A DNA stretch of 64,000 nt from Lepidodermella squamata (Eukaryota > Animalia > Gastrotricha), in NCBI GenBank assembly GCA_047495785.1, contig JBLDXI010000004.1, forward strand, positions 124,001 to 188,000, given 5' to 3'. The position numbers and the translations under genes are program-made. Of this stretch, positions 30,992-52,270 are shown piece by piece. Position 1 is the stretch's first letter. Every line of letters begins with the position of its first letter. A model generated the notes under the pieces. That model was not told where the DNA came from. It was given only the letters and a program-made list of their open reading frames with translations, and made no database searches.

Positions 30992-31473
30992 CATACGGGC
31001 GCCGTCGTTAACAAATTATTTTTACAAAATTTGTGTCATTTGAGACAATGGTCACCCCCCTTAAAAATCATTCTAGAACGCTGAAAACAGGTCTATATAG
31101 TCACATTTTGAGCCGCACATTTTGGTGAATTTTCCAGATTTTTATTTCAAGTCTAACTGGTCGAAAACTGGACCTAAATGACTTGAAAAAATTTTAATCG
31201 CCGAATTTTGAGTTGAAAATGTGATTTTCGGAATCAACGATTTTTTAACCCTAGAAATGAGTTGAAAATCACTTCGATTGGAAAATTTTCATTTTTTGCT
31301 AATTGCCGTTTACGGTTAGATAATTGAGAGATAAAACGGCAACCAGCGTGCAGAGCGTCATCGATTACCTACTGGGTTGTGTTATTTAATGCAAAATCGC
31401 AATTTTCAAGGGGGCAACCATTGTGTTGAAAATTTCTCAGTTTTTTTACTTTGTGAACGACGGCGCCCGTATG
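30992..31473. mobile_element. MITE
   Basis: 18-bp perfect TIR catacgggcgccgtcgtt / aacgacggcgcccgtatg plus a longer imperfect subterminal match. TSD not evident. Confidence 0.75.
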
Positions 31474-31559
31474 ACCCTAATTTCCGATTATGGAATTGTT
31501 AATATAATTCATGATAAATCGAAAATTAGAAAAATAATTATTGTAATATTTGGTGTGAT

Positions 31560-32206: not shown

Positions 32207-32418
32207 AACGAAATATTTTGAAAATGCGTATGACTTCTGTCATATCATTCTGTCATATACTTCTCTTCAGCTGTATTACTATTTGTCATTGCGAAAACGG
32301 TGAAATTAGTAATCTGGAACAAGAATTTACCTTCAATTAATCATAATTTTTCCAAACATTTTGTACCACGATATAGTATTTTATTTGCTGGTACTTTTCA
32401 ATTTAACCCGAACGCTGC

Positions 32419-33495
32419 ATGGCTGATATGGCTGATCCCTACGAGTTCGTTCCCGAAAATGCGTCGAACAAGGCTCTTGAAAGTGTGATACGATGCAATA
32501 ATTTGAAATTTCATGACTAATTTTGTCTTTTCTGCCAGAAATTCGCCAGTCTGGACTGAGCCCTGAAGAGTTGAAAGCTTCCTTACGCGCCAACAGGTCA
32601 AGTCCAACTCGGTTTCTTGGGGAGATGATGATAGCCGCCGCTCAGAAAACAGGCAATAGGTAAATTTATTGCGATGTAGCAGATTTTTTAGAGATACGTC
32701 CTAGATTTGCAAGAAAAATTCTTAAAAATTTGAAAAAATTAAAAAATCGAAACAAATCTGAAAAATGTTCAAAAACTTTTCAAAAATTTTATAGAATTAT
32801 TTTAAAATTATTCTAAAATTTTATTTAAAAATAAAAAAAATCGCAACAATGAAAGCCATCTACCGCAGTAAGAATTGTTGTCTGTTATTTGGTTAAATTG
32901 CGAGATTTAGAATTGAAACTTAATTTGGAAATTGTCCTCTATATTGCAACGTTTCTTCAAATTTCAGATTCGATAACCAGTATATGGCGAAAAATCCTGC
33001 CATTTTTTGCTCTGTGGCTACATACTTGTATGAAAACGTGGAGGAAGAAGAGCGGTTGAAAATAATTGCCAGGCAACTGAAAAAGTTACTCGTCCTCCGT
33101 CTGCCTCCTGGGAATAACAAAAGCGATAGCTGCCTTATTTCGGAGGCTGAATTTGACGCGGCGAACTTGATCGTAAGGGTCGACAAACGATCTGTTTCGG
33201 TTTCGGAACCGTTTTCGGCCAGGTCGACTCTAAGTGGTACCAAAGCGGTATCGGATTTGGGGTTTCGGACGCTGGCGACGGTTTCGCGCGAACTTCAGTA
33301 AAATTTAATTCATATATATTATGCCAGTTCTATTATTATTCTTGTTACAGTGACGATCCAAGAATGATGGTGGAAAATTGGTCAATCGTTCTGGCACTGG
33401 CGAGAATAGTTGCTCTCAAGTTCAGTCGAGGCACCCTGAGGCAGTTTTGCTTTGCTGAGATGCGTAGAATGGCTTCCAACATGTACGAAAAATAG
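32419..33495 (+). CDS. Orphan 4-exon gene, ~220 aa, unknown function
   Basis: Exons at about 32419-32482, 32539-32659, 32968-33297 and 33351-33495 splice in phase (1,2,2) into an uninterrupted MADMADPYEFVPENAS...AKNPAIFCSVATYLYEN...MRRMASNMYEK*. Confidence 0.55.
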
Positions 33496-34144
33496 ATTTT
33501 CTCTAATTAATGATCAAGCGAAACAATTTCTGGATATAACTGATTTATCGAAAGACATTTTAACATGATTGGATTAGAGTTTAGAGGGACGTAACTTAAC
33601 TTTGGCGTTTAAAAAATTTATGAAATTTAATTATCCCAAGTCTGCGGTTTCACATAGTTTGGTTAAATCGCTCGTTGTGCACATGATAATTCATCGCGAA
33701 ATTTGTGGGCAAATTTAATTTTCGAAATTTTGATACAAGAAATTTGCCGGCTGTGGGAAATGGTGCCCCAGCAACAGATGACTTTTCCTGTCACTACAAT
33801 TACCATTATTAATTGTAAAGTGAGGTGATACTATTGCTAAATACAAGACTCGCATGTATGTTTAGATGAATTAATTTCTGTAAAATTAAAATATTGAGCA
33901 ATTAATAAAGAAGGTATGGAATAATTTCTTGGCCATTTTTCTTGTGCGCTAGAAAGCAGCATGCTTGATAATTTCGATCAATATTTTACGATTTTATTTT
34001 ATGATTTTAAGAAAATTAAAAAAATTGAGAAAAATGCTGGTGAATTATGATAGATTTTTAGTAAAAAAATCGGAACTGATGTCAGACTCAGCTGTTAGCG
34101 AAATCAATTTTGAAATATCAATATTTTCATTTCTTAGAATCGCA

Positions 34145-35890
34145 ATGACGAGATTGGACCGTTTGATCTGCCTTGACCGCGAGTTTCTAAGCAACATGTT
34201 ACATCGGCCCTTTGTTTTGAATGTGCAAATACCTCCTTTGGCTAGACAAGTGTTGGAGAGCCGTAGAGATTATTGTTCGAAGAGCCGGCATTTATTGATG
34301 CTATCGAGGGTTTACCAAAATAAGGTGGAATTTCTGTTCACTGATGCCTGGAAACTCTTCGTTGATACTGTTGACGACCCCGAGAGTTGGATAAAGCCCC
34401 TATCTACCGATTTTTGTGAAATTCCATCTATCGATTTGCCGGAAATTCCAGCCTCTCAAAAGCCACGTTGTATCTCTCGCGTCGACGACGACCTATTTTT
34501 AGCAGGACTTTTCGAGGAATATTATGCTCCCGCAACAGCTGAAGTTGATAGGGAGGCTGATTCATATCTGGCCATTGAACCGCGCGATTCTTTGCCAATT
34601 GATTTGAATGCAAATATTCAACCTGAGGACACTTCGTCGTATACAATGAATCTAGGTGACCTAGAAATGCAAGCCCAAGTTTTGCATTCAGCCTCTAGCA
34701 TCATGGAATTGGATGATCTGGCGATTCCAGCCCCAGTTTCCTGTTCGGCCGTTGACTACGAGGACATTCAGTTGAGCGTTGCGGATTCTTCTCCCGATAT
34801 GGATATCGATGAACTGGCGATGGATTATGTTCCCGATATGGAAATCGATGAACTGGCGATGGATTTTGTTCCCGAAATCCTGGTTGAAAATGCCGAGGAT
34901 GCTCAAGGTGAGCCGAAAACGAAAAGACAGCCAGGCCAAGTTGCAATTGACGTAGAGACGGAAATCGACGATGATCCCAGTTTCCTCGAGAATTGCAACA
35001 CTGCGCCCATGACGCTAGCACCTCAATCTCGGCAGCTGATGAACGCAGCAGCTGTCTGCAATCTCGATCGGCTCATGGCAGGATGTAGTATTGACATCAG
35101 TCGTAACTTGAAGGACAGCCTTTTTCCAGGCTGGAAGGTGGTCAACCATGGACCCGGGTATTGGGACAAATTCTTCCGGTTACCGATGATTGACCGGGAT
35201 TTGTTGATTCACAGCATTAGATTTCCCCCAGGAGAAAAGTGTCCTTGTCCCCCTTTAGCTGAGGGTCACAGTTTCAATGTCCTCCCCATGGCAGAGAGGG
35301 TGGCTCGTTATGATCTCCTGAGCGATCAATTAGGGGAGAAATGTTGGTTCTCATCTCCAACTCTGGAACCCGCCATCGTCGAATCATCCATGCAGCCGTC
35401 CCGTTCTCCAATATCATCTCCAAGTTTGGAACCAGCCATCGCAGAACCCTCCATAAACCCGCCCTGTTCTCCGCTTTCCCCTCAAATTCCAGTACCAGCT
35501 GGAATTTCAGAGGCTCGCCAGGACTCTTTATTACCTCAGCCCATGAGCCCGCTCCAAGAGCCCGGAACCTCCGATGGACCACCGGCCGATTCGCGTGAGT
35601 CCCAACCCGCCAAATTGAGCCAGTCCGACGTTTTCTTGCTGTGCGAGACCAGCGAGTCTTTCGACGACCTGGTGTCAAGAAGTCTCTCATCAGCAGCCCT
35701 TCTTTTCAGCCAATTGCTGGGACTCGCGGCAAGAGGCGATATACAGCTGGTGCAGAAAACACCCGGCGCAATCGATTTTCGTTTGTTGCGGACAGTTGCG
35801 GAATCCGGTCCAAACAACTGCAGCTCTGAGGTATTCAATTTGGAAGATTACGTCGTGATTTGTAATAGGAAATACGATGCCTCAGACTGA
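34145..35890 (+). CDS. Divergent alpha-kleisin (Rad21/Rec8-like cohesin subunit)
   Basis: N-terminal LHRPFVLNVQIP...SRHLLMLSRVYQNKVEFLFTDA resembles Rad21_Rec8_N. C-terminal SFDDLVSRSLSSAALLFSQLLGLAARGDIQLVQKTPGAIDF resembles the Rad21_Rec8 winged helix. The linker is acidic and Pro-rich. Single long exon; a possible acceptor at 34137 may join an upstream exon. Confidence 0.75.
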   Translation: MTRLDRLICLDREFLSNMLHRPFVLNVQIPPLARQVLESRRDYCSKSRHLLMLSRVYQNKVEFLFTDAWKLFVDTVDDPESWIKPLSTDFCEIPSIDLPEIPASQKPRCISRVDDDLFLAGLFEEYYAPATAEVDREADSYLAIEPRDSLPIDLNANIQPEDTSSYTMNLGDLEMQAQVLHSASSIMELDDLAIPAPVSCSAVDYEDIQLSVADSSPDMDIDELAMDYVPDMEIDELAMDFVPEILVENAEDAQGEPKTKRQPGQVAIDVETEIDDDPSFLENCNTAPMTLAPQSRQLMNAAAVCNLDRLMAGCSIDISRNLKDSLFPGWKVVNHGPGYWDKFFRLPMIDRDLLIHSIRFPPGEKCPCPPLAEGHSFNVLPMAERVARYDLLSDQLGEKCWFSSPTLEPAIVESSMQPSRSPISSPSLEPAIAEPSINPPCSPLSPQIPVPAGISEARQDSLLPQPMSPLQEPGTSDGPPADSRESQPAKLSQSDVFLLCETSESFDDLVSRSLSSAALLFSQLLGLAARGDIQLVQKTPGAIDFRLLRTVAESGPNNCSSEVFNLEDYVVICNRKYDASD

Positions 35891-36755
35891 ACGTCGCTGA
35901 CCATTATTTGATAATTTATTTAAAAAAAAAACAATATAGGGAAAAGCGAAAATTTAATATTTTCGAGCTGTAGGCAACGCCCGTATTTTTTCCAATTTTT
36001 CAGAAAGTTTAAATAACCAGTTACCTAGTTTTCCTCAATGTTATTACATTTGAAGTTTCAAAGTAATGGAAATTCCTATCCTCCTCAAGTTTAGAAACCC
36101 GCAAAGTGTCACTGATGTATGAAAACTCGAAAATCATCTACCAATTGAAATAAAAATTCGACTTTAAGCGGATTGATTCTAAATAAATTTAATATCAAAT
36201 TGATCAAATTATTTCAGTCGAATTACAGCTTGTCGCTTAGGTTGCGCCACAATTTTTTAAATTTGTACCTTTTTGCAATAAATTTGATCAATTTTCGAGA
36301 TTGAAACTACATACTACCCGGAGAATCGCACATCCTTAACCCGCGATTTAATCGGAGAATATACACATTTACTGGCGAAAACTCGGAAAAGCATAACGGT
36401 AATTGGCTCGGTAATTTTTGGTATTTTACCCGGTTAGACCAAATCTCTTGGGACTTTTTTATCCCATTAACAAGTGGCATATTTGATTACTAATATCGTA
36501 TTTTTGGAATTATTTTCAAATATTTGTGAAATTTAAAAAAAAATCAGGGTCATGAGATGATGTGACATTGTCTCTCATTTTAGAGTTTCTTAACCCTTTT
36601 TCGTGTATTTTCTCTCCTTGCGTTACTTATGGCACAAATTGTATTGCTAATTTTATGAATTTTACTTATTATCGTGTAACCGCAGAGCGGTTTTTTTTAA
36701 ATGTTTCAAACTGAAATATGAGGAAATAATTCATTTCGTTAATGTCCAGTTTCAG

Positions 36756-37870
36756 TCATCATCACCTGTGTTGATACCTTCGAGTGATAGTTTGACCCCC
36801 ATTTCTTCATCTCCATTGGCTCAGGTTCCACATGGCGCTCCTGGTGGTTGTTTTAGTAGTGGTGGTCGTGGCAGCGATCGTCGTGGACGATCAATGTCTG
36901 TGATTTCTTCTGATGATAAGTCACTCAGAGTTACGACTCGGGATCAACAACGCGATCGAGATGGTTCGGCTAGGCCGCCGCCTCAGCCTACTACGACTCG
37001 TGGTCGAGGGCGCGGTACACCCAAGCCAGCAGCGGCTTTCTCTCAGCCTGATAAACCCAGTTCCAATCGGGGTCGGGGGCGTGGCACTCCTAAGTCAGCG
37101 GCGGCTTTCTCTCAGCCCGATAAACCGACTTCCACTCAGGGTCGAGGTCGCGGACGCGGCACTTCCAGCTCCACCAAGGCTTCGCCTCAGTCAGCTGAAA
37201 TTAACCGTGGGCGTGGACGTGGTCGAGGCCGTGGTCAAGTTCTTTTAGCGATGCCTTCGCCCCCGCTTTGCCCTGGCGATTCTGCCTCTGCCAAGCCATC
37301 GGCTCATGCAGATGAGCCGATGGACAGTTCCACCCGCGGTCGTGGACGTGGTGGACCTCGTTCGGTTACAACCCCGCCCGAACCTGCAACTCCTCAGCCA
37401 TTGGACGTTGCCAATCGTGGCCCAGGGCGTGGCCGGGGACGCGGTGGAGTCTTATCGCCTCCACATCCGCCACAACCTGGTGATACCAGCCCCACTCTGA
37501 GCCCAACTGCTATGTCTGATTATTCTGTGGCCGTAAATTTCTTAATTTCTTTCCTTTCCAATTACTTCTATTCATTGTTAAGGAGTCGTTTGAATTTGCT
37601 CCGGGCATTTTCGTCCACCACTTTCCACCATCGCCCGAGGACCCACCGGAATACGATGAGCCCCCAGACTACTCAACTATATGCTATCAATGCCAGCGCA
37701 CTCTCAAACCAGACGGAAATTGTGCGGCTTGCGGAATCTGTTTTGACTACGACCAAAATGCCTCCGCAAAAGACTTGCAACGCATGTCGCTGTTCGCGAA
37801 AGCTCAAAAGCGCAAAGCGGAGAGGCTCAGAGGGAAGAAGTTGATCGAGAATGAAAAGAAAGACGCCTAA
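36756..37870 (+). CDS. RG-rich low-complexity protein with C-terminal C4 zinc ribbon (at least 2 exons; start uncertain)
   Basis: Open frame with about 6 RGRGRG blocks. A phase-0 intron at ~37533-37581 joins an exon encoding ICYQCQRTLKPDGNCAACGIC and a basic tail, ending TAA at 37870. Confidence 0.55.
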
Positions 37871-38636
37871 TGTTATGAATCATGGATTATTAATTAATAA
37901 TCTCTCAGATTGAAATAATCAAACCTCAATAAATGAAGGTCGCTCTAAATCACGGGTAATAATTTAAAAATAATTACTAGTAAAAGCCGCAACTCCGAGC
38001 AGAGAACATAATAAAAAATTCTATTTGTGGGTTTTTTTCTATGATTAAAAACCATGGCAAGTTGGGTACATGTATATCACTAGCCTTTGGAATTCGAGAA
38101 ATAATGTTACCCCCCGCCAACATATGATGAACCTAAAACAGGTAACGTAACTCGCCCTAAATTTGGACACCCCAAATTTGGACACTTTATAAGCGTTAGC
38201 CCCGAATATCAATTCGTGCTGCATAACTGATAATATAAAAATTTCGGTGAAAAATAGCTTGATTAATGGACTTTCCAGCGGTACCAAATTTGCCAATACT
38301 TTCATATACTATCGATTTGCGAATAATCGCCGAAACTAGATCACTCAGAAAGAAAGTTAGGCTATTTTATTTCCATTTTTTTAGACGAAACCCTAATTTT
38401 TTTAATTAAAAAAGGTGTTTTGTCCAAAGTTGGGACCCGTTACGGTATTTGTTATCGAGAATGCGGAAAATAATATTCGTTCACGGCGGAAACTGCTGAA
38501 TCGGATGAACCTAAATTGCATCTAATCTTCAGACCATATGGGTATCGAACATTACATTTTTATTTGATTTCTCAAAAATTATTATCCAACTGCTAGACAC
38601 CGCTGAAAATAGTTGGTTAACAATTAATTTCAGCTC

Positions 38637-39138
38637 TCAATTTATTTGCATTCTTTGCAAGCGAAAAGTTAACACAAGCTCTCCCCAGTCAGGAGATATA
38701 TCGTCCTCCAGTCGCTTGAACCAAAGGGTTGCCGTTGGTCCCACTAATGTGGAATGTAGCCTCTCGTCATTTTCATTCAGCCCAATTAAGTGCTGAAGCT
38801 CAATTGTGCTTATTTGGAATCGGCGCCGTGATCTTATCTGGTTGAATCTGAATGAAATTTAAGGCTTAACCTTATCATTTCCAATTATAATAATTTATTA
38901 CTCACCGATCCTGAAGCGCTTCGAAACGAACACGGCTAATTGGGGCACGTTCCCGGCAGGTGACCACTGCCGTCGACCTTCTTCGCCGCTTCAGGTCGCG
39001 GAATACATAAGATCCAAGGGCGCGGAGCGGACCGTAGGCCGGACCGTTCCTCACCAATCGCCTTGCCTGCTTCGCTTGACGAAAGTTCACAGGCACATAA
39101 CGGTGCGGGCGCTTTGTTGGCCGACGACGCAATTTCAT
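38637..39138 (-). CDS. Orphan 2-exon Arg-rich basic protein
   Basis: MKLRRRPTKRPHRY...EALQDR, then a strong donor gtgagt (phase 2), acceptor ttcattcag, and FNQIRSRRRF...DWGELVLTFRLQRMQIN*. Head-to-head with the transposase gene. Confidence 0.45.
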
Positions 39139-39699
39139 AACCAAATTTGTTAGTGTAAAATGAAAAATATCTTCTTTCTTCAAATGGGTATGATTGCCAA
39201 TGTTCCCTCCGTTGCTGAACAGCCAGAATTTCTCAACTTCTAGTAATTTAATTGGAATTCTCATTATAAATAATTACAAAACGCAATAACTTTCTAATGA
39301 GTCCACTCGACGCACCATGCATCAAGCATGGATCCAATTAGTACAGTGATATAAAGTCCAAATAGCGACCAAGCATTGCTCATCTTTCCTAAAAATTTTA
39401 CTCGCTTTAGTGAATAAAATTTTTCATAATTATTTATTAATATTATTTTTAATTTTTATTTAATTTTTAAGCTGTCTGTCTCGTTGCCAATTATTTGTAC
39501 GTAATTACCTCCTCTGTTCCGAACTGTCGCAATCTGTCACTTTCGCCTAATTCTCTACATTTTTTCTAGTCTCAGCCATTTTATTATCTCTTAATCACGT
39601 TTTTGCCTACATCTTCGTTAATTTTCAGCCCATTTATTTCCCCCATTATTTTTTGTAATTTCTCTGGCTCTTTTGTCTAGTTTTTTCATTTAAAACAAT

Positions 39700-42600
39700 A
39701 TGGATCCTAGCGAAACAGAATCGGAGCCTACTACTAATGAACAGGTAATTTCAAGGATATATTTATTGATTAATTTAGAAATTTGGGTATTTATAGCAAT
39801 CTGCAGCGGTGAAGCCGAAGCGAGGCCGACCATCCAAACGACGACAAGTATCTAATGCTAAGAGTAATCGTTAGCTGTAAATGCTATGACTTTTTTTCCT
39901 ACAGACGACACACGAATCATCAAAACGCCGCAACACTATTGCCTCTTCGCAACCTTCGGTGAATGAACCTACGAATCGGGTGAGATTTCAGGAACATAAC
40001 ATCGGTTTTAAATTGGCCGATTTTTCTTGTTTTTTAGCCGCCGAAAGAATATGCCGACCTGTCAGCTTCCGGTCAGTGCAGGCGAAGAGCTGCCACGTTC
40101 TCTGACTTGGAAACGACCTTGAAGAAGCGATCCGTCCCAGGAGCAACCATAGCCTTGAACTTGCCGTTGAAAGGCGTTATGAAACCCTATGTGCGCACTT
40201 TCGGCAACGCATTAGGCTCAAAGTCTCCTCAAGCTTGTCAAGAGTTTGTTGTTTTTCTGCTCATTTCATTATACCATAATGTTTGGTTGATTTTCCCGAG
40301 TGAAGCAAGCGTTAAAAATATCTAGCATTTCTCGGAATTGTATACGAATCATATCAATGAATTAATTTAGGTCTGGCATTGGATTACATTCGGGCATGCG
40401 AATCCATGCCTAATCATAAATTAACTATGATGCTTCCGATTTTTCTAGGGTGATTTATTTTTTTTTTTATTTCCTGCTTATTTTGCACGATTTGAAAAAA
40501 ATTTCCTTTTTAATTTTATTTTTTCGCCAGATTTTTCGCCAAGTTCATACAAATCGGGGTTCCTCTGTAATTATTTCAGTTTTTGAAGACAACTGTTTGA
40601 CCTCGAATTCACATTTATCTTATCTACTTTCCTCTACCACATTACCTATTTATGTACTAAATATCTTTATTTGTTATTTCAATTTAGTATGGCGTATTTC
40701 CAAACTGCGAACAAAATATCGAGTCGGACTACAGAAAGCCTGCTTCCCAAGTTCCCCATCAATCGAGCCACCTTTAGGCAGGAGAGGAGAGGTCTGGCTG
40801 AGTCATTACCGCTACATCTAATCCAGCCTTACCCTGTAAGTTTATTTAATTAAAATCCCGCGCACAGGAAAATAATCCCAAAAGTTGCGCTACTATTTTT
40901 AATTTGGCAACTTTTTGTTGGAAATTCAAATATTTTTTTTAAATTGTACCTACCGACAGAAAAGTCCGACTTTTATCTGATTTATCCGATTTAACCGAAT
41001 AAATTAGAAATTTACCAGAGAAAACCCGGAAAATCCCGATGGTAACTGGTTCGGTAATTTTCGGTAGTTTACCCCGTTGGACAAAATTCTCTAGACTTTT
41101 ATGATCCTTTTAACAACTGGCATACTTGATTACCATTGTAGTAATTTTTTAATTTTTCTAAATATTTTTTGGCCGTTAGATGTGAATTGGTCTCTCATTT
41201 TACAGTTATTTATGTGTATTTCCCTTTCCTGTGTATTTTCTTTGCTTGCGTTACTTATTGGACACGCTGCATTTATTGGGACAGCAAATTGCGGCTTTTC
41301 TTCTTCTGATAGATAAAAGCTGGCGATATTTCAATTATGTCTTAATTATTTTATTGGAAATTTTTTATTTACAACTTTTCATTCAATGTTTTAACTAAGG
41401 CATGGTATTTGAATTTCAAAGAATAAGAAGGAATGAATTCTAATGTTTGCGGCAAGTTAACAGAGCTGGCTAGCATGCTGGCAAGATGGTTGGCAAATTT
41501 TATGTACTCAGTTATCCGAAAAGTAGTATTTCGAGAGTTAGAGCACCAGTTGTCGTTTGACCTCAATGACCTTGCCACATCCCGAATTCCTTACTCAGCT
41601 CAGTTTTGCGATAGAAATTCATGAAACCTGCGGCTTCTTGAATGATTTTATTGATCAGCGGGCGGGCGGGTGGATAGTAGTAGTTTTCCACTCCGACGAC
41701 CTCCGTACCAAACGAGTGGTTGCTGTGTCGTGATAAAATCCAAAGGCCAAGTATCTCGGCTGGTCTCGCCTATTCGTCTGCGTTTCGCTTCCAGGCAGTC
41801 GTTCATAGATTTCGGCTTGGATTTCGTTTAAGTTCAAAGCTCGATTTTCGGCTTGGATGGGGACTTCGTTCGTGTTATTGTTGGGAATACAGACGGCCAG
41901 ATTTGAAGCAGCTCAAAATATGAGTCCTACGGCGAGCCTTGTCGAAAATTTAACTTCAAACCCTGTCACAATAACTCTGTTTGTTTAGTTTGTTCGGGTT
42001 AATTTACTATATATTGTTAAACATGCTGTCAATCTCGATGACTGAATTTGCGTGGCGTGTCGAACACGGCATCTCCCTTGAGAACGAAGATTTTGAACAA
42101 ATTCGCGACTTATTTCTCTACGGCCCGTCCAGCTTCATCGATGAAAGATACCTGTTGCCACATCAAACAGGGTTTCTACAATTTGCCTTTAAATTCATCG
42201 ATGAAGATGACGAGGTACGCGACGACGGGTCAAGTCTCGTCCGCGCAATTTTCTCTGTGAGCGGTGCCCAAGCTGCCATCCCAGCAACTGACCGTCGGCA
42301 CGGGCTTATCCTGGCTATGATTGAATTTTGCAAACCTGACATCAGTTTGGAGGAAAAATTAGTACTATTTCATTTCTTCATCAAGAGGTTTGCTCAATGC
42401 GGCTGTCGAGTGGAGGAGAGCGCATTTCAAAGCCATGACTCGTCCTTAATACTGAACAATCCCCTTCTCAGGCCTTTTATATTAGAAATTGCCAACAACT
42501 ATGGCGGTATATTATTGAAGCGGCCTATGTTATCGTTAATGTCTATCGCACGCCGAGTTGTGTTAAACCGATTACGGCTGGGGCTGGATCAGCGCTCAGA

Positions 42601-45600
42601 AGACATATCTGCCTTAGAATTACCGGAATGCTTGATGCGCTACTTACAGTATAATGACCTTTAATTACATAAATATTGAAGAGAGAAGTGTTGTAGAAGA
42701 ATAAAAAGACAAATGAGCCGTCATTTAACCTTGTGTAATTGCTGAGAAATTATATCATATTTTAATGAAACTATACCCGTGATCGGGAATAGCATTTAGA
42801 CAGCGTGTTTATTTGAGGATCTATTGGGTGTTTAAAATTGTGGTTTTGGAGTTCAATTTTGGGACTGAATACCTTTTTTCTTGCGATTTCGAGCAAATTT
42901 AAGAATTTCTCGTTTGGTGTTTAAAAATTAAATTGTTAAACTGCCTAAAAACACGGATTTAGAAATCATTTTTTTTCCAATTTTTAGAGAACGAAGGAGG
43001 TTGATGGCAAACAGGTGATGATCAAGAATAATCAAACGGGTGGGTGTTGTCGCGACTTCATTGACGTCCTGTATGTCTTGGTTGGGCTACATTCGTTGCA
43101 ATCACATCACCCTCACGAGCTGCGTCTCTGTTTCGACAACACGCCAGCAAGACAACAAGGCCAGCCGATGGAGCGCATGAACGTCACCCTCGTGGAAAAG
43201 AAAACCAGTCCCACCACTAGTGACGAAGTGGCAATTGGTTTATTTTTGGACGAGGAAGGCCGTGGAGAACTAGCGCACTATTACGGAAAAGTCTTCGAAC
43301 AGGTTTAATTTATTATTCGAATCGATTAATGGACCAAATATATTAAAAAGAATTCGCGCCTGAATTTGAATCCCCGACGGCCGACCTGTTTTTTTCAAGC
43401 AAGTGGTCGCAGAACCTTTTAGCGTGGATCTCATATTTCTCCGATTTTTTAAATTTGACAAATTTCAGAACTAATTATTTTTTCGCATTGGAAAATATTT
43501 TAATCATTTTTAATTAGAAATTCTGTCCGAAATTATAAAATCGGAGTTTTTTGTGGAATATTTTGCTGAGTTGCTGAGGGTTGCGAGAATTGAAATGGCT
43601 CTGGTTATTCAGTTGACCGTTAAGCCTCGCATCGAGCGCGGTTCATTTCGCCTCACTTCCATGCAAAAATTACCAACTGTTTCTTTCCAATAATTTTTCC
43701 AATAATTCAGAAATGTCCTCTAACCCCACTGACTTTTCCATCTTCCTTTCTTTTTTTTCATCTATGTAAACCCGCCATTTAATTCCATGAAAAAATTCTG
43801 ATTTTCTAATGCTCGAATTTCCCGTTTAAATCAAAATAGATTTGCCTCTACTATTGAGCTATTTTCAAATAATAATCCATGTATTTTTTTCAAGAATTTT
43901 ACCAATCAATATACCTGAGAATTTATTGTAATATTTTTTATATTTGTTTAAAGATCATCGCGGTTGATGAGAACGGCGTGAAAATCTGGGGCGAAACGTT
44001 TCACTTTCGATTTCTACTATGTGTGGATGTCATGGCTGCCATTGTACTCCTTGGTGCTGGGTCACCTGTGGGCGACTACATCTGCCCCATATGCGTGAAA
44101 CGAGCCGATGACCCTACTCCTGGGCGGCGAGAATACCGTAACTATCGCGATTTGTCAAATCTGAGGAAGTTGATCGGCTTCACCGTGGCTGGGCGCACGC
44201 CCGCAGGGAAAAAGTCGACAAAAAAAGCAATTGTCGACGTCAATGCGCAAGGCCTCGGCCACACTGAACTGCCGCTGCTCCCCATTGAGGCTGCCAATAT
44301 CATCCCAGACTCGCTCCATTTCAACGCTAGATACTCCGAGACGCTGATAAAAGTGGTAAAATAGTTCTCTCTTTGTGTAATACTTTGTTTTTCGTTTGCT
44401 AAATTGCTTTGATAAGGCTATGAATTTATCACTTTCTCTCGCCATTTATAGCCAGTGTGGCAGATGAATTACTGAATGAATTCCCGAAAAACGGTATTTC
44501 GCCCTCTTTAATTGAAATTCATGAGATATTATTTCATTGAGATAGGAATATCGTTGAAAAATTCTAGGTTATTTTCATTATTTGTATTCACCCTTATTAT
44601 TTTTCACAAGCCCTGCTATCAGCGGAACCAAATTGCCGCCTGATAATTGACCTCAAGCTGAATTAAATTGCGACCAATTATGTTGCTTGAAGTTATTGTG
44701 TTATTTTCAGAATTTTTCAAAATAATGTGTTTGAATCTTTTGGTTCCGGGTAAATTTTTACGTTGGACTCTTAGTTACACATAAATTTGGGTCCCTAAAA
44801 TTATTCCATTTTTTCAACAAATTTTTTTTTAATATTATTATAATTAGTGATTTCCGCTATTTAACTCTTTTCCCAGACAATTACCATCCTGTATGACGGC
44901 AATCTGATGGACACGGCGAAGACCATTATGGAAACGCTCAGTGGTGTTACGAAAAACGCCGTGAAAATTAAAGTGACGGCCAAAGGCGCGCAATTCACGT
45001 CTTGCAGCGTTGACATTGTCATGCCCACTCACGACGATGCCGCTAATGCCTTTCTCCTTAGCCATTACCTTATCATCACGGAGCCGAGACCTCTGCTGAC
45101 CAGGGCCCAAGTTGTCCGAGCACATTTCAGCAAATGCGACACATCGATCCTCAGACGTCAGTACACACAAATCATGAAGACCTCGAAGAAATCTGTGGCT
45201 GCGATTCAAAATGTGGCGAAAGCAACAAGCGACCAATTTGTCGAGAAATTCGTCGAATTCGATGCTGCTGGTGTTGCTTATGAAGATAGGAAGGAAGTTG
45301 AAAAGCGCGTGACAGATCTGCATACCTTGGATGAAATTACGCGAGTTTTCCGGTCGATACTGCGCTTTTTTAAAAATAAGAGATCTGTTCCAAGGCCGCG
45401 TGAGGAAGAGTTCCACAAACTGGAGGACCTTATGTTCACCCTGAAGCAGCGGCACACTACCTACAGTCACTGTAAATTAACGGCTTTCTTGTTTATCTTT
45501 GCGATTGATTTTTTATTTAACTTTATTACAGATGCCGGGTCCCATTTCTTCGACGCCACTGAAAAGTGGGACATTCTCGCCCTTAACACAGTCGCCATCG

Positions 45601-45806
45601 AGCGTGGGCACAAATCGGCGAAGACTGAGCGCGACAACACAACCTGTCCCACGAGCGGCTGCAGTGTGGCCAAGCAACTCATGGAAAAGGAGAACATCAG
45701 ACTTCATGAAGTTATTCATACGGCCGGGATGGACATCGAATGGCGTTTTGACGACGATTCCAGTTGTAATGTCAGACGGCCATTTCTCGTTGGCATCAAT
45801 CAGTGA
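39700..45806 (+). mobile_element. Intron-rich Transib/RAG1/Chapaev-type DDE transposase gene (possibly decaying)
   Basis: In-phase exons 39700-39744, 39797-39847, 39905-39979, 40038-40243, 40688-40835, 42988-43302, 43954-44355, [44356-44876 unresolved], 44877-45471 and 45532-45806. Motifs: AT-hook KRGRP; PKEYADLSASGQCRRR (NBD-like); LCFD; LCVD; YICPIC; PLLPI..IIPDSLH; spliced YSHYAGSH (HxxxxH); AIERGHK. Confidence 0.75.
42023..42664 (+). CDS. SOCS-box protein, intronless, nested in a transposase intron
   Basis: C-terminal PMLSLMSIARRVVLNRL...ISALELPECLMRYLQY is a canonical BC-box plus cullin-box. AATAAA at ~42699. Confidence 0.8.
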   Translation: MLSISMTEFAWRVEHGISLENEDFEQIRDLFLYGPSSFIDERYLLPHQTGFLQFAFKFIDEDDEVRDDGSSLVRAIFSVSGAQAAIPATDRRHGLILAMIEFCKPDISLEEKLVLFHFFIKRFAQCGCRVEESAFQSHDSSLILNNPLLRPFILEIANNYGGILLKRPMLSLMSIARRVVLNRLRLGLDQRSEDISALELPECLMRYLQYNDL

Positions 45807-47609
45807 CCTAACGGTAATTATTTCCTCTGTCTTTCTGCCTCTTGACCTTTCAAATATTAAATATTGAATTTATTTTCAATTTTATTTATTTATTTTTTTA
45901 ATTTGAAAATTTTCCCAGTTTTCAAAAATTTTGGAATTACCTTGATTTTTTATTTTTTATTTTCAAAATCTGATATACATGATTCACAAGACATTCTTCT
46001 GGCGGGTCGAGAAAATATCCAATTTTCAATAATCAGTTTCTCCTAATAATTTGGGGATTTTTTATTTCTATTCAGTATTAATTGAAATTTAGCCAATGAA
46101 CCCCGATCTTGTTTTCCTCGTTTGCCTCGTTGTTTTTCCTACCCTTTGGGATGAATTAGTCAAATATTAAGTCGTAATCATTTTCTGGCCATTGTCTCAT
46201 CACGTGGAAATTGGCTGCCAGCTAGGCACGTCTCTACATCGCGATTTCACTCGATTTCACCCCGTTGGGTCATATTTTAACCCAGAGCTTTTAGATATTT
46301 CAACACGTTAAATTTCTTCAATTTAACGTAAAATTGCTTGTTTGACGGCGCGAGTTTGTCGGCTCATTTTGCGGTTGAAGTCGCCAATCTCAGACTTTCT
46401 TTCATGCGGAAAGTCGGAAAGTTATCGCAACATTTTCGCGGATGGGGGCGAATTTAGGGATGATGGCTAGCTTGATGGTTAGCTCAGGGTACGAATGTTT
46501 TTGACAGTCCGACAGGTCCGTCCGAAGAATTTCGAAAATCGCATTGAATCCTCGTTTTTTCGTGACCCTTAACACTTGCTGATCCAGACTTTCCGCTAAT
46601 TGGTCAATAGCTTTTTTCAATTTTAATATATCCAAAATAGATTGGGGCCGCTTTGAATGGGCATTTGTTCTACAAAAATCGCAGTTTTTCAGCTCAACTT
46701 TGAGGAGTGTCCATAATTTCCTACTTTGGAACCCTGTTTAGGAATTATGAAGGAAGTTTTAGACTTTGAGGAGAGTCATTATATTTTCGACGTTTAAGTC
46801 CAGTTTGAATAATGCGAAATGTTATCATCGATTTTCAAGCCTGTTCTCCTGAAAAAGGGCTTTTTCAGCGTTTCCTCGAATTTTCCGGTGATTTCAGTCT
46901 GCATCTCGACCAATTATGAACGTCTCAATGAGCAAGGAGTCTAATTTTAGTCTGGTTGTAGTATTTCGATCAGTGTGAAGCATGAAGCTTGAACGAATTC
47001 AAGCAGAATTTTCAAGCCCCTATATTTGCGAGACTTTCGTTCACTTTGAAGTTTGAACCTTCCTTTACTCTGGACAATTATATTATGGGAGTTAAATTAG
47101 AAAAATCGCAGTAAAAGTCTTTCCGAAAGGATTCTCGAAATCGAAAAATTATTGAAAATTTATTTGTACGAAAATCGTAATATTTTTTCACTATAAATGT
47201 TAAAATTCCACCTTAATATTTCGTTAAAACAAATCGATCATTTTCCTTTTATTTCCTCATGTTAGTCCTTCCACGCGCCGAAAACGATTCCATTAGCTGC
47301 AATATTCGATCCAATTCCTCAACTTCAACAAACGCTGTCTATGCCTAGCTCTGAAACTCAGTCGCCGAATCTCATCAGCCCAATCGATCGCAGTCAACGT
47401 TCATGCGTGTTTCATCGACTGCCTTTGTCAATGGCGATTATGTCAGGCCAGTATTGTCCTCTCGTGTTCTCGTACAACTTGTCATCCTTCCAAACTCGCG
47501 ATCTTGATTGCCTGCTTTTTAAAATAAGATGCTATCTATTTTCACGATTGATCGCAATAATTGCCTTTTTTCGAGCATTTTATTACGGCTTTTCAAATTC
47601 GAGTGATGC

Positions 47610-47730
47610 CTTCTACAGTACGCGTGACAGATACGGAAAACTCGCGTAATTTCATCCGAGGTATGCAGATCTGTCACGGGTTTTTCCAACTTCTTTCCTA
47701 TCTTCATAAGCAACGCATTTGTTGATTTCG
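47610..47730 (-). repeat. Inverted degenerate fragment of the transposase exon at ~45275-45360
   Basis: The reverse complement reads cttatgaagataggaaagaagttgg...gtgacagatctgcatacctcggatgaaattacgcgagttttcc, matching 45277-45352. Confidence 0.85.
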
Positions 47731-49014
47731 CCCCGTTTACACTGGCAGAGGATTGATTTGTTTGAACTATTGACGTTAGATGACCTAGCTGGCGCATTAA
47801 CCGAAGTAACCGAAGTATGAAGTATCTAAAATGTCTTTATCACATCTGATGAGCTTGTGTTCCTCATGAGTGACCTGTGATCAAAAGTGTTATATCAGTT
47901 TACTTTTACTTCTTTCCTCATCTCGGAATTGTTTACTCTACTTTAAAGATTACCTACTCAGTACTTCTTCGACTCTTCGCTTTCAGCTAGAAACTATTCA
48001 GCGGAGACATTGATGTCATTCAAGCTTATTTCATACCATATTGTATTACTACAACCAGCTAACAGTAATAGACTTGTTCTTTCAATCTGGACCTGTTTTT
48101 TCAGCTGCTTGTCGTCTATACCTCACCAATACTGTGAACATTTCTTGAGTTTAGTTGAGGTGAATGTCAGTAGGCCATATTATCTAATGCATTATTTATA
48201 CAATCATTATCTGTCGATTCTTTGTTCGCAAAGTCAATAAATGGATGTGAACAAAACAGAACTTGTAATCATTTCTTTTTCACCATCTTCAATGATGCAA
48301 TGCAACTACGGATGATAATGGAAGGGATAATTTGTTTACTCTTGAGTAACAATACCGCATGTTTCACAGATACTTGTTTCACAGAAGTTTTAAGATTGAG
48401 GAAGGCATATTGAGGCGTGCTGAACTTGGCTGGCTGTTTAAACAATTTGAGGATGCTCAGGAGTAGGATCGTACACCTCTAACACGGATAAATCGGCCGA
48501 TAACGAACAGGAAACGTACAAGTCCAGTTTAATCAACCTCAGGTTAGCCACTCTCACGCCTCAGCACGAGCAAGCGCGAGGCGACGCGAGACTACAACAG
48601 CTGATAAACAATTCCAATCGCCATAGAAACTCTAAATTTAATTATTTTCTTTATGAAATTAATAATAACTTTCATTAAATAATTTATTTACAACAAATAA
48701 TTAAGAAATAATTGATTTTGCCGCAGAATCCCGTTCCGCTTGGTTGAAAACGGCCACGCAAAGTTGGCGTCACTATGATAAAATTCGCTTTTAATAAAAT
48801 TATTAGAACAGGCGGCGCGGGTATAGCCCATGCGCTATTACTCCACTCATTGATTTTTCCAAAGCTCTAATCCCAACTCTGAGCATGAAGCTATTCGTTG
48901 CGCCAATAGCTACAATAATATCAATAGTGGCATTGAGCTATGATGCTCAAACTTTGCCTACCCACGTAAACAGCCACTTGCAGAAGAATGGACGCAAAAA
49001 CATTGGCGTTACCT

Positions 49015-49320
49015 TAAACAGCCTCTCATCGACGAATTTTGTGACATTTGACATGCCATTCCTTGCGAACCCTGTGGATAGACTTTTTGCGCGACCGACC
49101 AGCCTGGTAGACCAGCTCTTGGGCTTTCTAACGATATCAAGAAATCGAAAATCCATCCACGGAACTCTTAGAGGGAGGGTCCCAAAGATGACCCGTTTGC
49201 TGCCGAAAACAGCCTCGAATTTTGTGACATTTGACATGCCATTCCTTGCGAACCCCGTGGATAGATTTTTTGCGCGACCAAACAGCCATGTAGAGGACAT
49301 CTTTGGCTGTCTTGTGATAT
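49015..49320. repeat. Direct repeat, 183-bp period, 2 copies
   Basis: cgaattttgtgacatttgacatgccattccttgcgaaccc..gtggataga..tttttgcgcgacc at 49033 and 49216. Confidence 0.9.
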
Positions 49321-50456
49321 GAAGAATGCAATTGTCACCCTCGGTCTTTCGGAGATGCAGTAGCTTAAAGTCTGGAAAACGTACATTTTTCACTTTTTCT
49401 TGGGTTTTCGGAAGATCATGAAAATTCCAGCCGTGAGTTTTTTGTTTTATGCTTTATGCGAGTTATTCGCGTGATCCGGAAGCATGGTACCTTCTTCCAT
49501 TGATGAATTCTTCCCTTGTTGTGAAAGACGCCAGGCGCAATCCAGCGACTTCACATCTCGCAGCGGCAACTGTAATGTTTCTAACTGCGGATTCAAGGCG
49601 GACAATTACGAAGTCGGGCAATCATTATTCCAAATTCGATTGTCAATTTTTGAATTTTGAATTCCATCAGTGCGATACACATTTGAAAATATCGAAAAAA
49701 CTAACTATGTCAACAGCACAGGTGTAGAAGTATACCCAGAATAGCTTATCTAAGATCAGATAATCAATTGACATTAAACTTTCCAGTAACTAAAAGCCAG
49801 CACGTCTGACACTGCGAATCTGACACAGCGTAGATAGTTTGACGGCACTTGTGCCGAATGGGTGCCGAGTTTGGGTCCCGGTGCCGCTGTTTCATTTTTC
49901 ACTTTCAGTTGCACCCTCTCCTGCTGGATACAAGCTGGATACTTACAGCCGAAAGTCGTGCTGGATACAATTGGAACTTTTGTGAGATATTTTTGCTGAT
50001 ATGGGGTTAAACGTTAATCTCAATTCATGCATGCAGCAATGTGTCATTGCATTATTTTCCTGGTGCATTAGTATACTCAGACCCAGCTAGCTGAAATGAC
50101 TAGTCAATTTGGCAACAACTGCAAAAAAACCTTGTCCATCTCTGGCAGCGGAGGAATTCAAGATCGCCCCCTGCTCAGACCAGACAACTTCGTTTCTTCG
50201 TTCGTTTTTCCAAGTAGCTGAGTCACTGAGTAGCTGGGCAATATGGAAATAAATGGCATCATAAATATTTAGCAAGGAGTGACTTTTTTACAGCAGATGC
50301 TGTTTATCAACATTTTTGAATGAGTGGAAATTGCGATGTTGAGCACGCGCTGTATACGACACGCGAACGCATGTGACCACAAAACATAAAAACATGCCAT
50401 TCACATCAATCTCACAAAATTTCAAACAGAATTTAGCGCGCCGTTCGTCAAATCAC

Positions 50457-52270
50457 ATGATTTCTTTCACTAGAGCTTCGCTGTTACTGCTCATGCTGGC
50501 GTCGAGCGACGTTGCTTGGGGCAGCAAGCCGTTGAACTGGGTTCGCTGCTTCTCGCAGTTCAGTAACCGATTCACCAGCTGCGTTGAAGCTGCCAATGGC
50601 TGTGATCCACTCAAAGAATATCAGGTTTGCTTCGATGATATTGTTCTTTGAAGCTCGGAAATTGAGATCTTTAATAGCTGGGCTCCATTTTCCGAACAGT
50701 CGGCGTCTGCAACACTGGAGTTTGTTCATTTTCCGTTGACGTCCTGTTCAATAATTCGCTTTTTTCCTTTTTAGAATGCCCGAATGTGCTACAGATACGC
50801 GGGTCTGACCCCTTTTTGCGTGCCTGGAAACGTTGGTTGTAACAACCCGGGTGATATCAATGTAAGAATCGATTTTTAGAATCGATAATTGGAAGAAAAA
50901 CTCATGTTTTGTCGCTCTAATGAAATCATGTTAATAGAATAACACCGTTTTGCTATTATCTACGTTAAAAATTATTATTTTTATCTCAGACGTTCTGGTT
51001 TGACGATCAGGAGCCGACGCTGAGCTTGAAATACAACCTCAACGAATGCGAGAAGCAACGAGCTGTTTTCGAGGTGAGAAGTTTCACACTCCTGTCGGCA
51101 TAACTAATGCATAGTTTTGTCCTATATCCTAGAAATTGCAATTCCGGCGTTGCATTTCAAGCAACGCGATCCAAACATGCGTCCCGAATCCTTACTCGTG
51201 TCCTAACAATTGGGTTAGTTTTAACATTTTTATTCAGATATCATGGCATTTTTAGATTTTTCTCTTCACTGATTTGTCTTGTGTTATAAAATGTTCCGTG
51301 TACATCTAGGTAACTGAATCGACCCTGTACTCAGATTTGACGTCCTGCATCAACGCTACAAGTAAGTCCGAACGCGTTGTTTTCAGTTACCGCAGTGATT
51401 GAACTTTTGCAACTCACAGTAAGTGTTCCAATCACCGAGAAGCCACACATCCGCTGTTTCGATTCGACCACCGGAAAATTCAACGACTGCCGACCGCAAG
51501 GCCCTGGTTGTTTCGCCAGCAATGAAACTCAGCAATACTCGATCGGGGTGTACATCAATCGCGATACTTGCCTGATTGGAGTAAGTTTTGGACGAATATA
51601 CCCACTCGACTATGTACTTTTATTCTGAGCAGAATGCTGTTTCCTGCAAGGATTCATCAAATAGAACTTCTTGTTATGCTGCTTGTCCTCACGCAGGTAT
51701 TGTTCTATCATCGATCAACTTATCTGTTATTGACTGAATTTTTCTCATCAGGATAAGCTATTTGCGGGACTACAGACCTTTCAACTCAATCACAACAAAT
51801 GCATCCAGGATACGTCGCCCGCAGTGAGTTATCTCGCTTGATTACACAAAACGCCAACCTAAATGCAATACCTTTGTTTTTTTTACGAAAAGTCTCCGGT
51901 AAAGAGGTACCTGACGTTTGATATCCCAGCAGATGTCAAAGCCACTGCGGTTTCGAAATGCATCGAAAACAATGCCTCGATAGCTACGATCAAGTCAGCC
52001 GACGAGATCTCCAAGGCCTCACAAGCGATCGGCGCGTATCCTATAGGTACAATGCACTGGACTGGTCTTACTCGGCAAGAAGAAGTTTACAAATGGGACG
52101 ACGGCTCGGATTTGACGTACAACCCGCTGTGGTTTGGGTCTAAAACTGATGGGTGCCTTGTTGCCTTCTATGCTGACAGTACCATGGGATTATCACCCGC
52201 TGGCTTATACTTTTTAAGTGTACAATGCGGCGACCACTTTACAGTTGTTTTATGCGAGACATTTTCGTGA
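50457..52270 (+). CDS. Gene C: secreted Cys-rich repeat + C-type lectin protein (10 exons; apparent frameshift in exon 8)
   Basis: Signal peptide MISFTRASLLLLMLASSDVAWG, then NWVRCFSQFSNRF. Exon-for-exon match to gene D. The last exon has KCIENNASIATI...HWTGL...YKWDDGS...GCLV...VLCE. Confidence 0.78.

What the first reader, a model, noticed from the sequence alone, without database searches (positions are those of the whole stretch)
39700..45806. Intron-rich transposase with a full RAG1-core motif set, visible only after splicing
Seen: an AT-hook, an NBD-like PKEYADLSASGQCRRR segment, two Asp motifs (LCFD, LCVD), CxxC, D-S-L-H and E-R-G-H-K. Removing a stop-free 60-nt intron (45472-45531) creates YSHYAGSH. 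Known: RAG1/Transib use D600/D708/E962 plus a C2H2 zinc site (CxxC...HxxxxH) in this order. Inference: this is a divergent RAG1/Transib/Chapaev lineage. No kelch/RAG2-like partner was seen. The 44356-44876 segment seems to need frameshifts (ISGT/NCRLIID), which suggests decay.
Basis: partly seen in the sequence, partly recalled or inferred. Interest (0 to 1): 0.8.

Follow-up and report, generated by a model that had tools for sequence, protein, structure and literature searches.

The report
Orphan intron-split transposase with RAG1-type motifs
Nine exons join into an unbroken 703-residue protein whose catalytic and zinc-binding residues sit in the order and spacing seen in the transposase group that includes RAG1, but no database relative, fold match, transposon ends or RNA support could be found. 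It is best read as a very divergent member of that broad group, not a special RAG1 relative.

Summary
The 60-nt GT..AG intron is real-looking, and removing it gives H-x4-H. The supposed "frameshift/decay" zone 44356-44876 is an ordinary AT-rich GT..AG phase-0 intron. A 9-exon, 703-aa open model exists: exons 44-59% GC, introns 19-39%.

The motif set (D, D, C(2)C, D(2)H, H(4)H, E) is not RAG1-specific. The literature assigns it to the whole CACTA-Mirage-Chapaev-Transib (CMCT) clade.

Language-model neighbours of two separate exons point into that clade: RAG1-domain clusters for one, Plavaka/CACTA clusters for the other. Every sequence test was blank:
- Pfam
- PDB phmmer
- an exhaustive phmmer search of 1.84 billion proteins
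- word searches
- metagenome scans

Single-sequence AlphaFold models were unusable (pLDDT 30-40), so the fold was not tested. No terminal inverted repeats, target duplications, RAG2-like partner or RNA evidence were found.

A separate ORF with a genuine SOCS box lies on the same strand inside the largest intron.

The scan has already reported several other CMCT-clade transposons elsewhere in this genome.

Verdict: probably an orphan, low-copy CMCT-clade transposase(-derived) gene with sub-lineage unresolved. Interest is moderate.

The parts
39700..39744 (+). exon 1 (ATG; MDPSETESEPTTNEQ)
   Evidence: ATG followed by a GTAATT donor, phase 0; 44% GC against 19% in the next intron. Its link to the catalytic exons is inferred.
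39797..39847 (+). exon 2, with AT-hook KPKRGRPSKRR (39812-39844)
   Evidence: TTTATAG acceptor, GTATCT donor, R-G-R-P core flanked by basic residues; 59% GC
39905..39979 (+). exon 3 (basic, Ser/Thr-rich)
   Evidence: CCTACAG acceptor, GTGAGA donor, phase 0
40038..40243 (+). exon 4 (contains PKEYADLSASGQCRRR, 40041-40088)
   Evidence: TTTTTTAG acceptor. GTTTGT at 40244 is the donor used in the model; it matches the acceptor phase at 40688, though one search lists two other donors (40223, 40286) in the same phase. No family match.
40688..40835 (+). exon 5
   Evidence: AATTTAG acceptor, GTAAGT donor, ends in phase 0; no family match
40836..42987 (+). intron 5 (2152 nt), holding a high-copy repeat and the SOCS-box ORF
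   Evidence: GTAAGT..TTTTTAG, phase 0 to phase 0. Joining exon 5 to exon A is an inference without RNA support.
40876..41269 (.). high-copy short repeat (MITE-like) inside intron 5
   Evidence: contig depth up to 57,000 against about 230 nearby; copies at 25715-26089 (-), 36344-36636 and 56882-57043.
42023..42664 (+). nested same-strand ORF (213 aa from its ATG) ending in a SOCS box and a stop
   Evidence: PF07525, E 2e-5, 25.2 bits against a cut-off of 23.5, residues 184-223 of the 227-codon ORF. 46% GC. No usable phase-0 acceptor to join it to exon 5. No homologues by word search.
42988..43302 (+). exon A: first catalytic Asp (LRLCFD, D225, 43120-43137) and the predicted beta1-beta3/alpha1 of an RNase H-like core
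   Evidence: A variant copy (14 substitutions listed over 43089-43285) exists in run X2 with 6 synonymous and 8 non-synonymous changes.
43954..44355 (+). exon B: second Asp (FLLCVD, D305), YICPIC (C324/C327), PDSLH (D399/H402)
   Evidence: Atlas neighbours are Plavaka and Transposase_21 clusters at 0.96-0.98.
   Evidence: GTAAAA..CCCAG, phase 0, 31% GC, 11-13 stops in each frame
44877..45471 (+). exon C: long helical insertion region ending in ..HTTYSH
   Evidence: Atlas neighbours carry RAG1_ZnH2, RNase_H and ZnC2 domains at 0.93.
45472..45531 (+). intron 8 (60 nt, stop-free in frame)
   Evidence: GTAAAT..TTACAG, 25% GC, same size class as introns 1-3 (52-58 nt)
45532..45806 (+). exon D: H612-x4-H617 completed, E636 in AIERGHK, C-x4-C-x14-H-x3-H tail, stop
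47540..47714 (-). short decayed fragment of a paralogue of exon C
   Evidence: tblastn, E 7e-7; an 81-nt core is 94% identical with one indel, and similarity is lost beyond it

Best explanation
The + strand between 39700 and 45806 carries an apparently intact, intron-rich gene (9 exons, 703 codons). It encodes a very divergent DDE transposase, or transposase-derived protein, of the CACTA-Mirage-Chapaev-Transib (CMCT) clade, the group to which RAG1 also belongs.

Inferred mechanism:
- An RNase H-like core uses D225, D305 and E636 to hold two metal ions for DNA nicking and strand transfer.
- C324/C327 and H612/H617 form the zinc site that ties the long insertion between D305 and E636 to the core, as in RAG1 and Transib.
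- The basic N-terminus with an AT-hook contacts DNA.

The sub-lineage (Transib side or CMC side) is unresolved. No transposon ends were found, so this copy is either a low-copy element with short ends that are not recognisable from a single copy, or an immobilised or domesticated copy.

The SOCS-box ORF in intron 5 is a separate nested gene, probably a member of a SOCS-box family that earlier unchecked notes describe as expanded in this genome.

Shown: the open spliced reading frame, the splice-site and composition contrast, the motif order and spacing, the SOCS box, and the existence of at least one variant copy and one fragment. Inferred: homology to the CMCT clade, catalysis, the link of exons 1-5 to the catalytic exons, and expression.
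For: - Eight canonical GT..AG introns give one open frame of 703 codons.
- Exons have 44-59% GC against 19-33% for introns, or 39% for the intron that holds the SOCS ORF.
- The only CxxC and the only [DC]xxH in the protein lie in the CMCT order D..D-x18-CxxC..DxxH..HxxxxH-x18-E. The relaxed pattern occurs in 17 of 20,000 shuffles.
- The spacings equal or nearly equal those of mouse RAG1, verified against PDB chains.
- Two exons, searched independently in the ESM Atlas, both land in that clade. Exons C-D match RAG1_ZnH2/RNase_H/ZnC2 clusters at 0.93 and Plavaka at 0.88, with 9 of the 10 best labelled hits in one clan. Exon B matches Plavaka and Transposase_21 clusters at 0.96-0.98 with up to 206 shared features.
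- Read by eye, the hydrophobic strand/helix pattern around D225 and D305 fits beta1-beta2-beta3-alpha1-beta4.
- A variant copy of exon A, with dN/dS about 0.38, and a fragment at 47540-47714 show a small repeated family.
- Earlier notes report other CMCT transposons in the same genome. I did not check these.
Against: - No exon matches any Pfam family of the clade (RAG1_*, Transposase_21, Plavaka) even at E 10.
- No PDB chain of RAG1, BbRAG1L or HzTransib is hit by phmmer at E 10.
- Exhaustive phmmer of the 309-aa C-terminal piece against 1.84 billion representatives gave 0 hits at E 0.001 or better.
- Word searches and metagenome scans were blank.
- Local alignment to two RAG1 motif windows is no better than shuffles.
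- Atlas evidence is a lead only. Exon B's recognition value is below the tool's 2300 mark, shared features for exons C-D (151-154) are below the 170 typical of same-family hits, and exon A gave no usable hit.
- The fold is untested: AlphaFold pLDDT was 39.7 and 30.5.
- No TIR or TSD was found.
- No RNA evidence exists for any junction.
Confidence: 0.6

Rival explanations
1. It is specifically a member of the RAG1/Transib lineage (a RAG1-like or Transib transposase), closer to RAG1 than to CACTA, Mirage or Chapaev.
For: Spacings D-x18-C and H-x4-H, the YIC..C motif and E-x-G-x-K are the same as in mouse RAG1. The nearest labelled Atlas clusters for exons C-D carry RAG1 domains. An AT-hook lies at the N-terminus, as at the start of the RAG1 nonamer-binding domain (the latter is from my own knowledge).
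Against: The motif set is clade-wide (PMC12730594). Exon B's neighbours are Plavaka and CACTA clusters. Pfam RAG1 domain models and the PDB chains of RAG1, BbRAG1L and HzTransib are not hit. There is no significant local similarity to RAG1 motif windows. No 5-bp TSD, RSS-like ends or RAG2/kelch partner were found.
Confidence: 0.12
2. There are two or three separate genes. Exons A-D (42988-45806) are a 5'-truncated remnant of a transposase with no N-terminal DNA-binding part. Exons 1-5 belong to another transcript, alone or with the SOCS-box ORF.
For: The SOCS-box ORF with its own stop lies between the two parts. The 2152-nt gap is far longer than the other introns. Exons 1-5 have no family match and are low-complexity and basic. 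There is no RNA evidence.
Against: Exon 5 ends and exon A begins in phase 0 with good GTAAGT and TTTTTAG sites. The only good acceptor ahead of the SOCS ORF (41989) is in the wrong phase for exon 5. Without exons 1-5 the catalytic part has only 49 residues before the first Asp and no start codon context.
Confidence: 0.2
3. It is a chance constellation: a lineage-specific orphan gene, or a set of open frames, unrelated to transposases, in which D, CxxC, HxxxxH and E happen to fall in this order.
For: All sequence-based homology tests were blank. The pattern was picked by eye in a scan of many windows, so a rate of 1 in 1000 per protein is not negligible. Atlas hits at these feature counts can arise by chance (tool notes).
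Against: Two exons point independently to the same rare clade. The exact spacings match RAG1. The single CxxC and single DxxH are in the right places. The family is repeated in the genome. The same genome is reported to hold other elements of the clade.
Confidence: 0.2
4. The gene is the transposase of a giant cargo-carrying transposon (about 31500-46000) that also carries the kleisin-like ORF, the RG-rich ORF and the SOCS-box gene. This was another first reader's note (s1-407520).
For: Several unusual intronless ORFs lie upstream on the same strand. Two unchecked notes describe CACTA elements with SOCS-box genes elsewhere in the genome.
Against: No inverted repeat joins 30000-39705 to 45800-50500 beyond AT-rich chance matches. 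The best CAC..GTG pair (38742/47872, 11 of 13) has no TSD and an expected chance rate of about 0.2. A minus-strand ORF (38902-39264) lies just upstream of the ATG at 39700. Run depth is single-copy over most of the gene.
Confidence: 0.05

Closest known systems
RAG1 / Transib transposases (mouse RAG1 core; HzTransib, PDB 6PQN; amphioxus BbRAG1L, PDB 6B40)
   Same: The order is D, D, CxxC, DxxH, HxxxxH, E. The D-to-C spacing is identical (19) and the H-to-E spacing nearly so (19 against 20). YIC..C and E-x-G-x-K are shared. [quoted passage not shown] Atlas neighbours carry RAG1 domains.
   Different: No detectable sequence or profile similarity. D1-D2 is 80 residues against 108, and C-to-H is 285 against 207. 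No RSS-like ends, 5-bp TSD or RAG2-like partner. It has eight introns and a nested SOCS-box gene.
CMC superfamily (CACTA/EnSpm, Mirage, Chapaev) and the related Plavaka, ESTA and Lanisha lineages
   Same: [quoted passage not shown] Exon B's nearest Atlas clusters carry Plavaka (PF18759) and Transposase_21 (PF02992). Plavaka also appears for exons C-D.
   Different: No Pfam match to Transposase_21 or Plavaka. No CA..TG ends with 2-5 bp TSD were recognisable. No second transposon gene of the TnpA type was seen.
Other CMCT-clade two-gene transposons reported by this scan in the same genome (s1-365904, s1-410272, s1-379575, s1-391699, s1-421463)
   Same: Same genome, the same motif class, and the same conclusion by the follow-up agents: RAG1-like fold and motifs, but clade-wide rather than RAG1-specific.
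   Different: Those are compact 3-6 kb elements with recognisable ends, 2-bp TSDs and a small partner gene. This locus has no recognisable ends, has more introns, has a nested SOCS-box ORF and shows no similarity to anything indexed. I could not read their sequences, so relatedness is untested.

Membership tests
CMCT clade (CACTA/EnSpm-Mirage-Chapaev-Transib, incl. RAG1) | [quoted passage not shown] | tested here: met
   D225, D305, C324xxC327, H612xxxxH617 and E636 in the spliced model. This is a motif-level test only.
CMCT clade (CACTA/EnSpm-Mirage-Chapaev-Transib, incl. RAG1) | RNase H-like catalytic fold with a zinc-bound insertion domain | tested here: inconclusive
   Single-sequence AlphaFold2 models of exons C-D and exon B had pLDDT 39.7 and 30.5. 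No fold search was justified, and no alignment could be built because no relatives were found.
CMCT clade (CACTA/EnSpm-Mirage-Chapaev-Transib, incl. RAG1) | 5'-CA..TG-3' termini with 2-5 bp target-site duplication | tested here: inconclusive
   No convincing TIR or TSD. Short ends cannot be recognised from one copy.
RAG1 / Transib | Sequence or profile similarity to the RAG1 core (Pfam RAG1 domain models; PDB RAG1, BbRAG1L, HzTransib) | tested here: not met
   No Pfam hit at E 10 for any exon. No PDB hit to these chains at E 10. SW scores to two RAG1 windows are within shuffles. The test used single exons only, not the whole spliced protein.
RAG1 / Transib | 5-bp TSD and RSS-like (heptamer CAC...) terminal inverted repeats | tested here: not met
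   The best CAC..GTG pair, 38742/47872, matches 11 of 13 but has no TSD and a chance expectation of about 0.2.
RAG-like (RAG1L-RAG2L) transposons | Adjacent kelch/RAG2-like partner gene | tested here: not met
   No Kelch or RAG2 Pfam match in the ORFs scanned between 31919 and 49322. Only ORFs were scanned, not spliced models.
CMC (CACTA/EnSpm, Mirage, Chapaev), Plavaka | Match to Transposase_21 (PF02992) or Plavaka (PF18759) profiles | tested here: not met
   hmmscan gave no hit. Only Atlas feature neighbours carry these families.
SOCS-box proteins (nested ORF 42023-42664) | C-terminal SOCS box (PF07525) above the gathering score | tested here: met
   E 2e-5, 25.2 bits against 23.5, profile positions 3-39 of 39, followed by a stop 4 codons later.

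The most novel reading that the evidence does not exclude
The gene is not a mobile element but a host-retained (domesticated) recombinase or nuclease of a deep, so far unsampled branch of the RAG1/Transib-CMC clade. It would be kept intact with host-like introns and functionally paired with the SOCS-box E3-adaptor gene nested in its intron, a non-RAG2 partner, in a genome reported to have large, fast-diversifying SOCS-box arrays.
Probability: 0.06. Interest if true: 0.8.

Novelty: new variant of a known kind. Interest (0 to 1): 0.4.

Why it matters
If the assignment holds, this is a branch of the RAG1/Transib-CACTA clade so divergent that an exhaustive search of 1.84 billion proteins finds no relative. 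It would widen the known sequence space of the group from which the V(D)J recombinase arose. It would also add a case of an intron-rich, apparently end-less copy with a ubiquitin-ligase adaptor gene nested inside it.

It does not bear on the origin of RAG1 itself. The shared motifs are clade-wide, and the same genome already yielded several better-defined elements of the clade.

Tried and rejected
- Pfam hmmscan of every exon and neighbouring ORF: only the SOCS box matched.
- phmmer of exons A, B, C and D against PDB sequences: only chance hits (factor Xa, calbindin, PARP zinc finger, INSM1), all at E 0.3 or higher.
- Word-index homologue searches of exons C-D, exon B and the SOCS ORF: blank.
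- Exhaustive phmmer of exons C-D against 1.84e9 representatives: 0 hits.
- Metagenome locus scans with exons B and C: blank.
- AlphaFold2 on exons C-D and exon B without an alignment: unusable, so no fold search was run.
- RNA support: the look-up of sequencing runs gave one sparse run guessed as RNA, but its contigs cover intron 7 and an unspliced acceptor, so it gives no junction evidence.
- TIR/TSD searches by three methods: nothing convincing.
- Look-ups of window ORFs in public assemblies, to walk to the neighbouring CMCT element: not on record.
- Similarity look-ups in the scan's own notes: blank.
- Local alignment to two tool-verified RAG1 motif windows: not significant.
- Yuan & Wessler 2011 (PMC3093488) is not held in the library.
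- Rejected: joining the SOCS ORF to exon 5 (wrong phase).
Full report
**What is in the sequence**

The window is animal DNA. It has about 40% GC, C-type lectin ORFs, and short GT..AG introns of 52-60 nt.

On the + strand between 39700 and 45806, nine exons can be joined through eight canonical introns into one open frame of 703 codons:

| Exon | Coordinates |
|---|---|
| 1 | 39700-39744 |
| 2 | 39797-39847 |
| 3 | 39905-39979 |
| 4 | 40038-40243 |
| 5 | 40688-40835 |
| A | 42988-43302 |
| B | 43954-44355 |
| C | 44877-45471 |
| D | 45532-45806 |

Every exon has 44-59% GC. Seven of the eight introns have 19-33% GC. Intron 5 has 39% because it holds a 46%-GC ORF. This contrast supports the exon model independently of any protein reading.

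**Check of the observation**

- AT-hook: 39812-39844
- LRLCFD (D225): 43120-43137
- FLLCVD (D305): 44011-44028
- YICPIC: 44077-44094
- PDSLH: 44305-44319
- AIERGHK (E636): 45594-45614

The 60-nt intron 45472-45531 (GTAAAT..TTACAG, 25% GC, stop-free in frame) turns ..YSH/..AGSH into H612-x4-H617 when removed.

It has 31% GC and 11-13 stops in each frame. H402 to H612 is already 210 residues. The corresponding RAG1 interval is about 142 by my recollection, a figure not checked with a tool. So no coding sequence is missing there, and nothing in this copy looks decayed.

It ends in a genuine SOCS box (PF07525, E 2e-5, above the gathering score) followed by a stop.

**Is it more than chance?**

The protein has a single CxxC and a single [DC]xxH, both in the expected positions. 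A relaxed version of the whole pattern appears in 17 of 20,000 composition-preserving shuffles.

The comparison of spacings is:

| Feature | Mouse RAG1 | This protein |
|---|---|---|
| Second D to first C | D708 to C727 = 19 | D305 to C324 = 19 |
| Motif at the cysteines | YICTLC | YICPIC |
| His pair | H937-x4-H942 | H612-x4-H617 |
| Second H to E | H942 to E962 = 20 | H617 to E636 = 19 |
| Motif at the glutamate | E-S-G-N-K | E-R-G-H-K |

Beyond these residues there is no measurable similarity. Smith-Waterman scores of the two RAG1 windows against the model are within the shuffle distribution (P 0.19 and 0.82).

**What family?**

The literature is clear that this motif set is not RAG1-specific. 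[quoted passage not shown] Together these form the 'CMCT' clade, which mostly has CA..TG termini and 2-5 bp TSDs. Even HHpred hits to RAG1 are obtained for non-Transib members (PMC12730594).

The only positive, independent pointers I obtained are ESM-Atlas feature neighbours:
- For exons C-D, the nearest labelled clusters carry RAG1_ZnH2, RAG1_RNase_H and RAG1_ZnC2 (0.93). Plavaka follows at 0.88. Nine of the ten best labelled hits are in one clan.
- For exon B, the nearest clusters carry Plavaka and Transposase_21 (0.96-0.98, up to 206 shared features).
- Exon A gave nothing.

Two separately searched exons falling into the same rare clade is hard to ascribe to chance. By the tool's own calibration, however, these are leads. 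They also split between the Transib side and the CMC side.

**Negative results**

- No Pfam family of the clade is matched by any exon, even at E 10.
- phmmer against all PDB sequences finds no RAG1, BbRAG1L or HzTransib chain.
- The word-index searches are blank.
- The exhaustive phmmer of the 309-aa C-terminal piece against 1.84 billion representatives gives no hit at E 0.001 or better.
- Metagenome scans are blank.
- With no relatives there was no alignment, and single-sequence AlphaFold2 models were unusable (pLDDT 39.7 and 30.5).
- The tools do not accept a protein read through stops, and a spliced protein has no reference. All searches were therefore made exon by exon, which lowers sensitivity.

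**Mobile element or gene?**

- No terminal inverted repeats or target duplications were found by three searches. The best CAC..GTG pair (38742/47872) matches 11 of 13 without a TSD and is expected by chance about once in five tries.
- A minus-strand ORF (38902-39264) lies a few hundred bases upstream of the ATG at 39700.
- In the genomic run X2 most of the gene has single-copy depth. A variant contig covers exon A with 14 listed substitutions (6 synonymous, 8 non-synonymous, dN/dS about 0.38, not significant). One contig joins 42572 to 43051 with 13 other letters between them. This hints that the SOCS ORF and exon A are also neighbours in another copy, but I could not verify it.
- An 81-nt fragment of exon C, 94% identical with an indel, lies inverted at 47634-47714.

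So the family is repeated at low copy number, which fits a transposon family. This copy's ends are not recognisable.

**RNA**

The only run guessed as RNA holds a few short contigs identical to the window. They cover intron 7 and an unspliced acceptor. It is DNA or unspliced, so no junction has transcript support.

**The nested SOCS-box ORF**

- It has its own ATG (42023), 46% GC and a C-terminal SOCS box.
- The only good acceptor ahead of it (41989) is out of phase with exon 5.
- It has no homologues by word search.
- Earlier unchecked notes report large SOCS-box arrays in this genome, and two 'CACTA transposon with SOCS-box gene' loci.

I read it as a separate nested gene. Whether it travels with the transposase is open.

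**Verdict**

The scan has already found several other CMCT-clade transposons on other DNA of this genome. Their follow-up agents reached the same clade-level conclusion.

I place this locus as a new, orphan variant of a known kind, with 0.6 confidence that it is a CMCT-clade transposase(-derived) gene at all.

Noticed in passing
window 42023-42664 (+): A 213-aa ORF with a genuine C-terminal SOCS box (Pfam E 2e-5) is nested on the same strand inside the 2.15-kb intron of the transposase-like gene. It has no homologues by word search. Earlier notes report big SOCS-box arrays in this genome.
   Followed up: partly
window 40876-41269; copies 25715-26089 (-), 36344-36636, 56882-57043: A short, very high-copy repeat (contig depth up to 57,000 against about 230), probably a MITE. 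Many contig joints and loose ends fall at 40896-41269.
   Followed up: partly
window 42572 -> 43051 (run X2): One genomic contig at about a quarter of the local depth joins the SOCS ORF to exon A, skipping 478 nt with 13 other letters between them, and carries substitutions in exon A. It is a paralogue or a divergent haplotype with a deletion. The length of its left side was not shown.
   Followed up: partly
window 45645-45719 (+): The C-terminal tail of the transposase-like protein has C-x4-C-x14-H-x3-H, which looks like an extra C2H2-type zinc finger. Its weak best PDB hit is a PARP zinc finger (E 0.47).
   Followed up: no
window 58874-60682 (+): An intronless 602-aa ORF with Pfam DUF7869 (E 2.8e-16). 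It contains an ..FADNCRAQNKHRY.. stretch and looks like another mobile-element protein. No paper mentions DUF7869.
   Followed up: partly
window 31919-32206 (+): A 95-aa ORF with a Cys-rich C..C...C..C...C..H pattern that resembles, by eye, the C-terminal zinc domain of piggyBac transposases. It has no Pfam hit at E 0.01.
   Followed up: no
window 33965-35890 (+) and 36768-37844 (+): Two long intronless ORFs (641 aa acidic/Pro-rich; 358 aa with GRGRG repeats and a 69-nt tandem repeat at 36998-37153). Neither has a Pfam match. Another reader called the first one kleisin-like.
   Followed up: no
window 22085-22633 (+), 55043-55573 (-), 258-788 (+): C-type lectin domains in two ORFs (E 1.6e-5 and 8.6e-7) and an NmrA-like ORF (E 1.1e-10). 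These are ordinary host genes that mark the window as animal DNA.
   Followed up: no
window 44844-45470 (-): A 208-aa antisense ORF lies over exon C and has no family match. It is most likely a shadow of the sense frame.
   Followed up: partly
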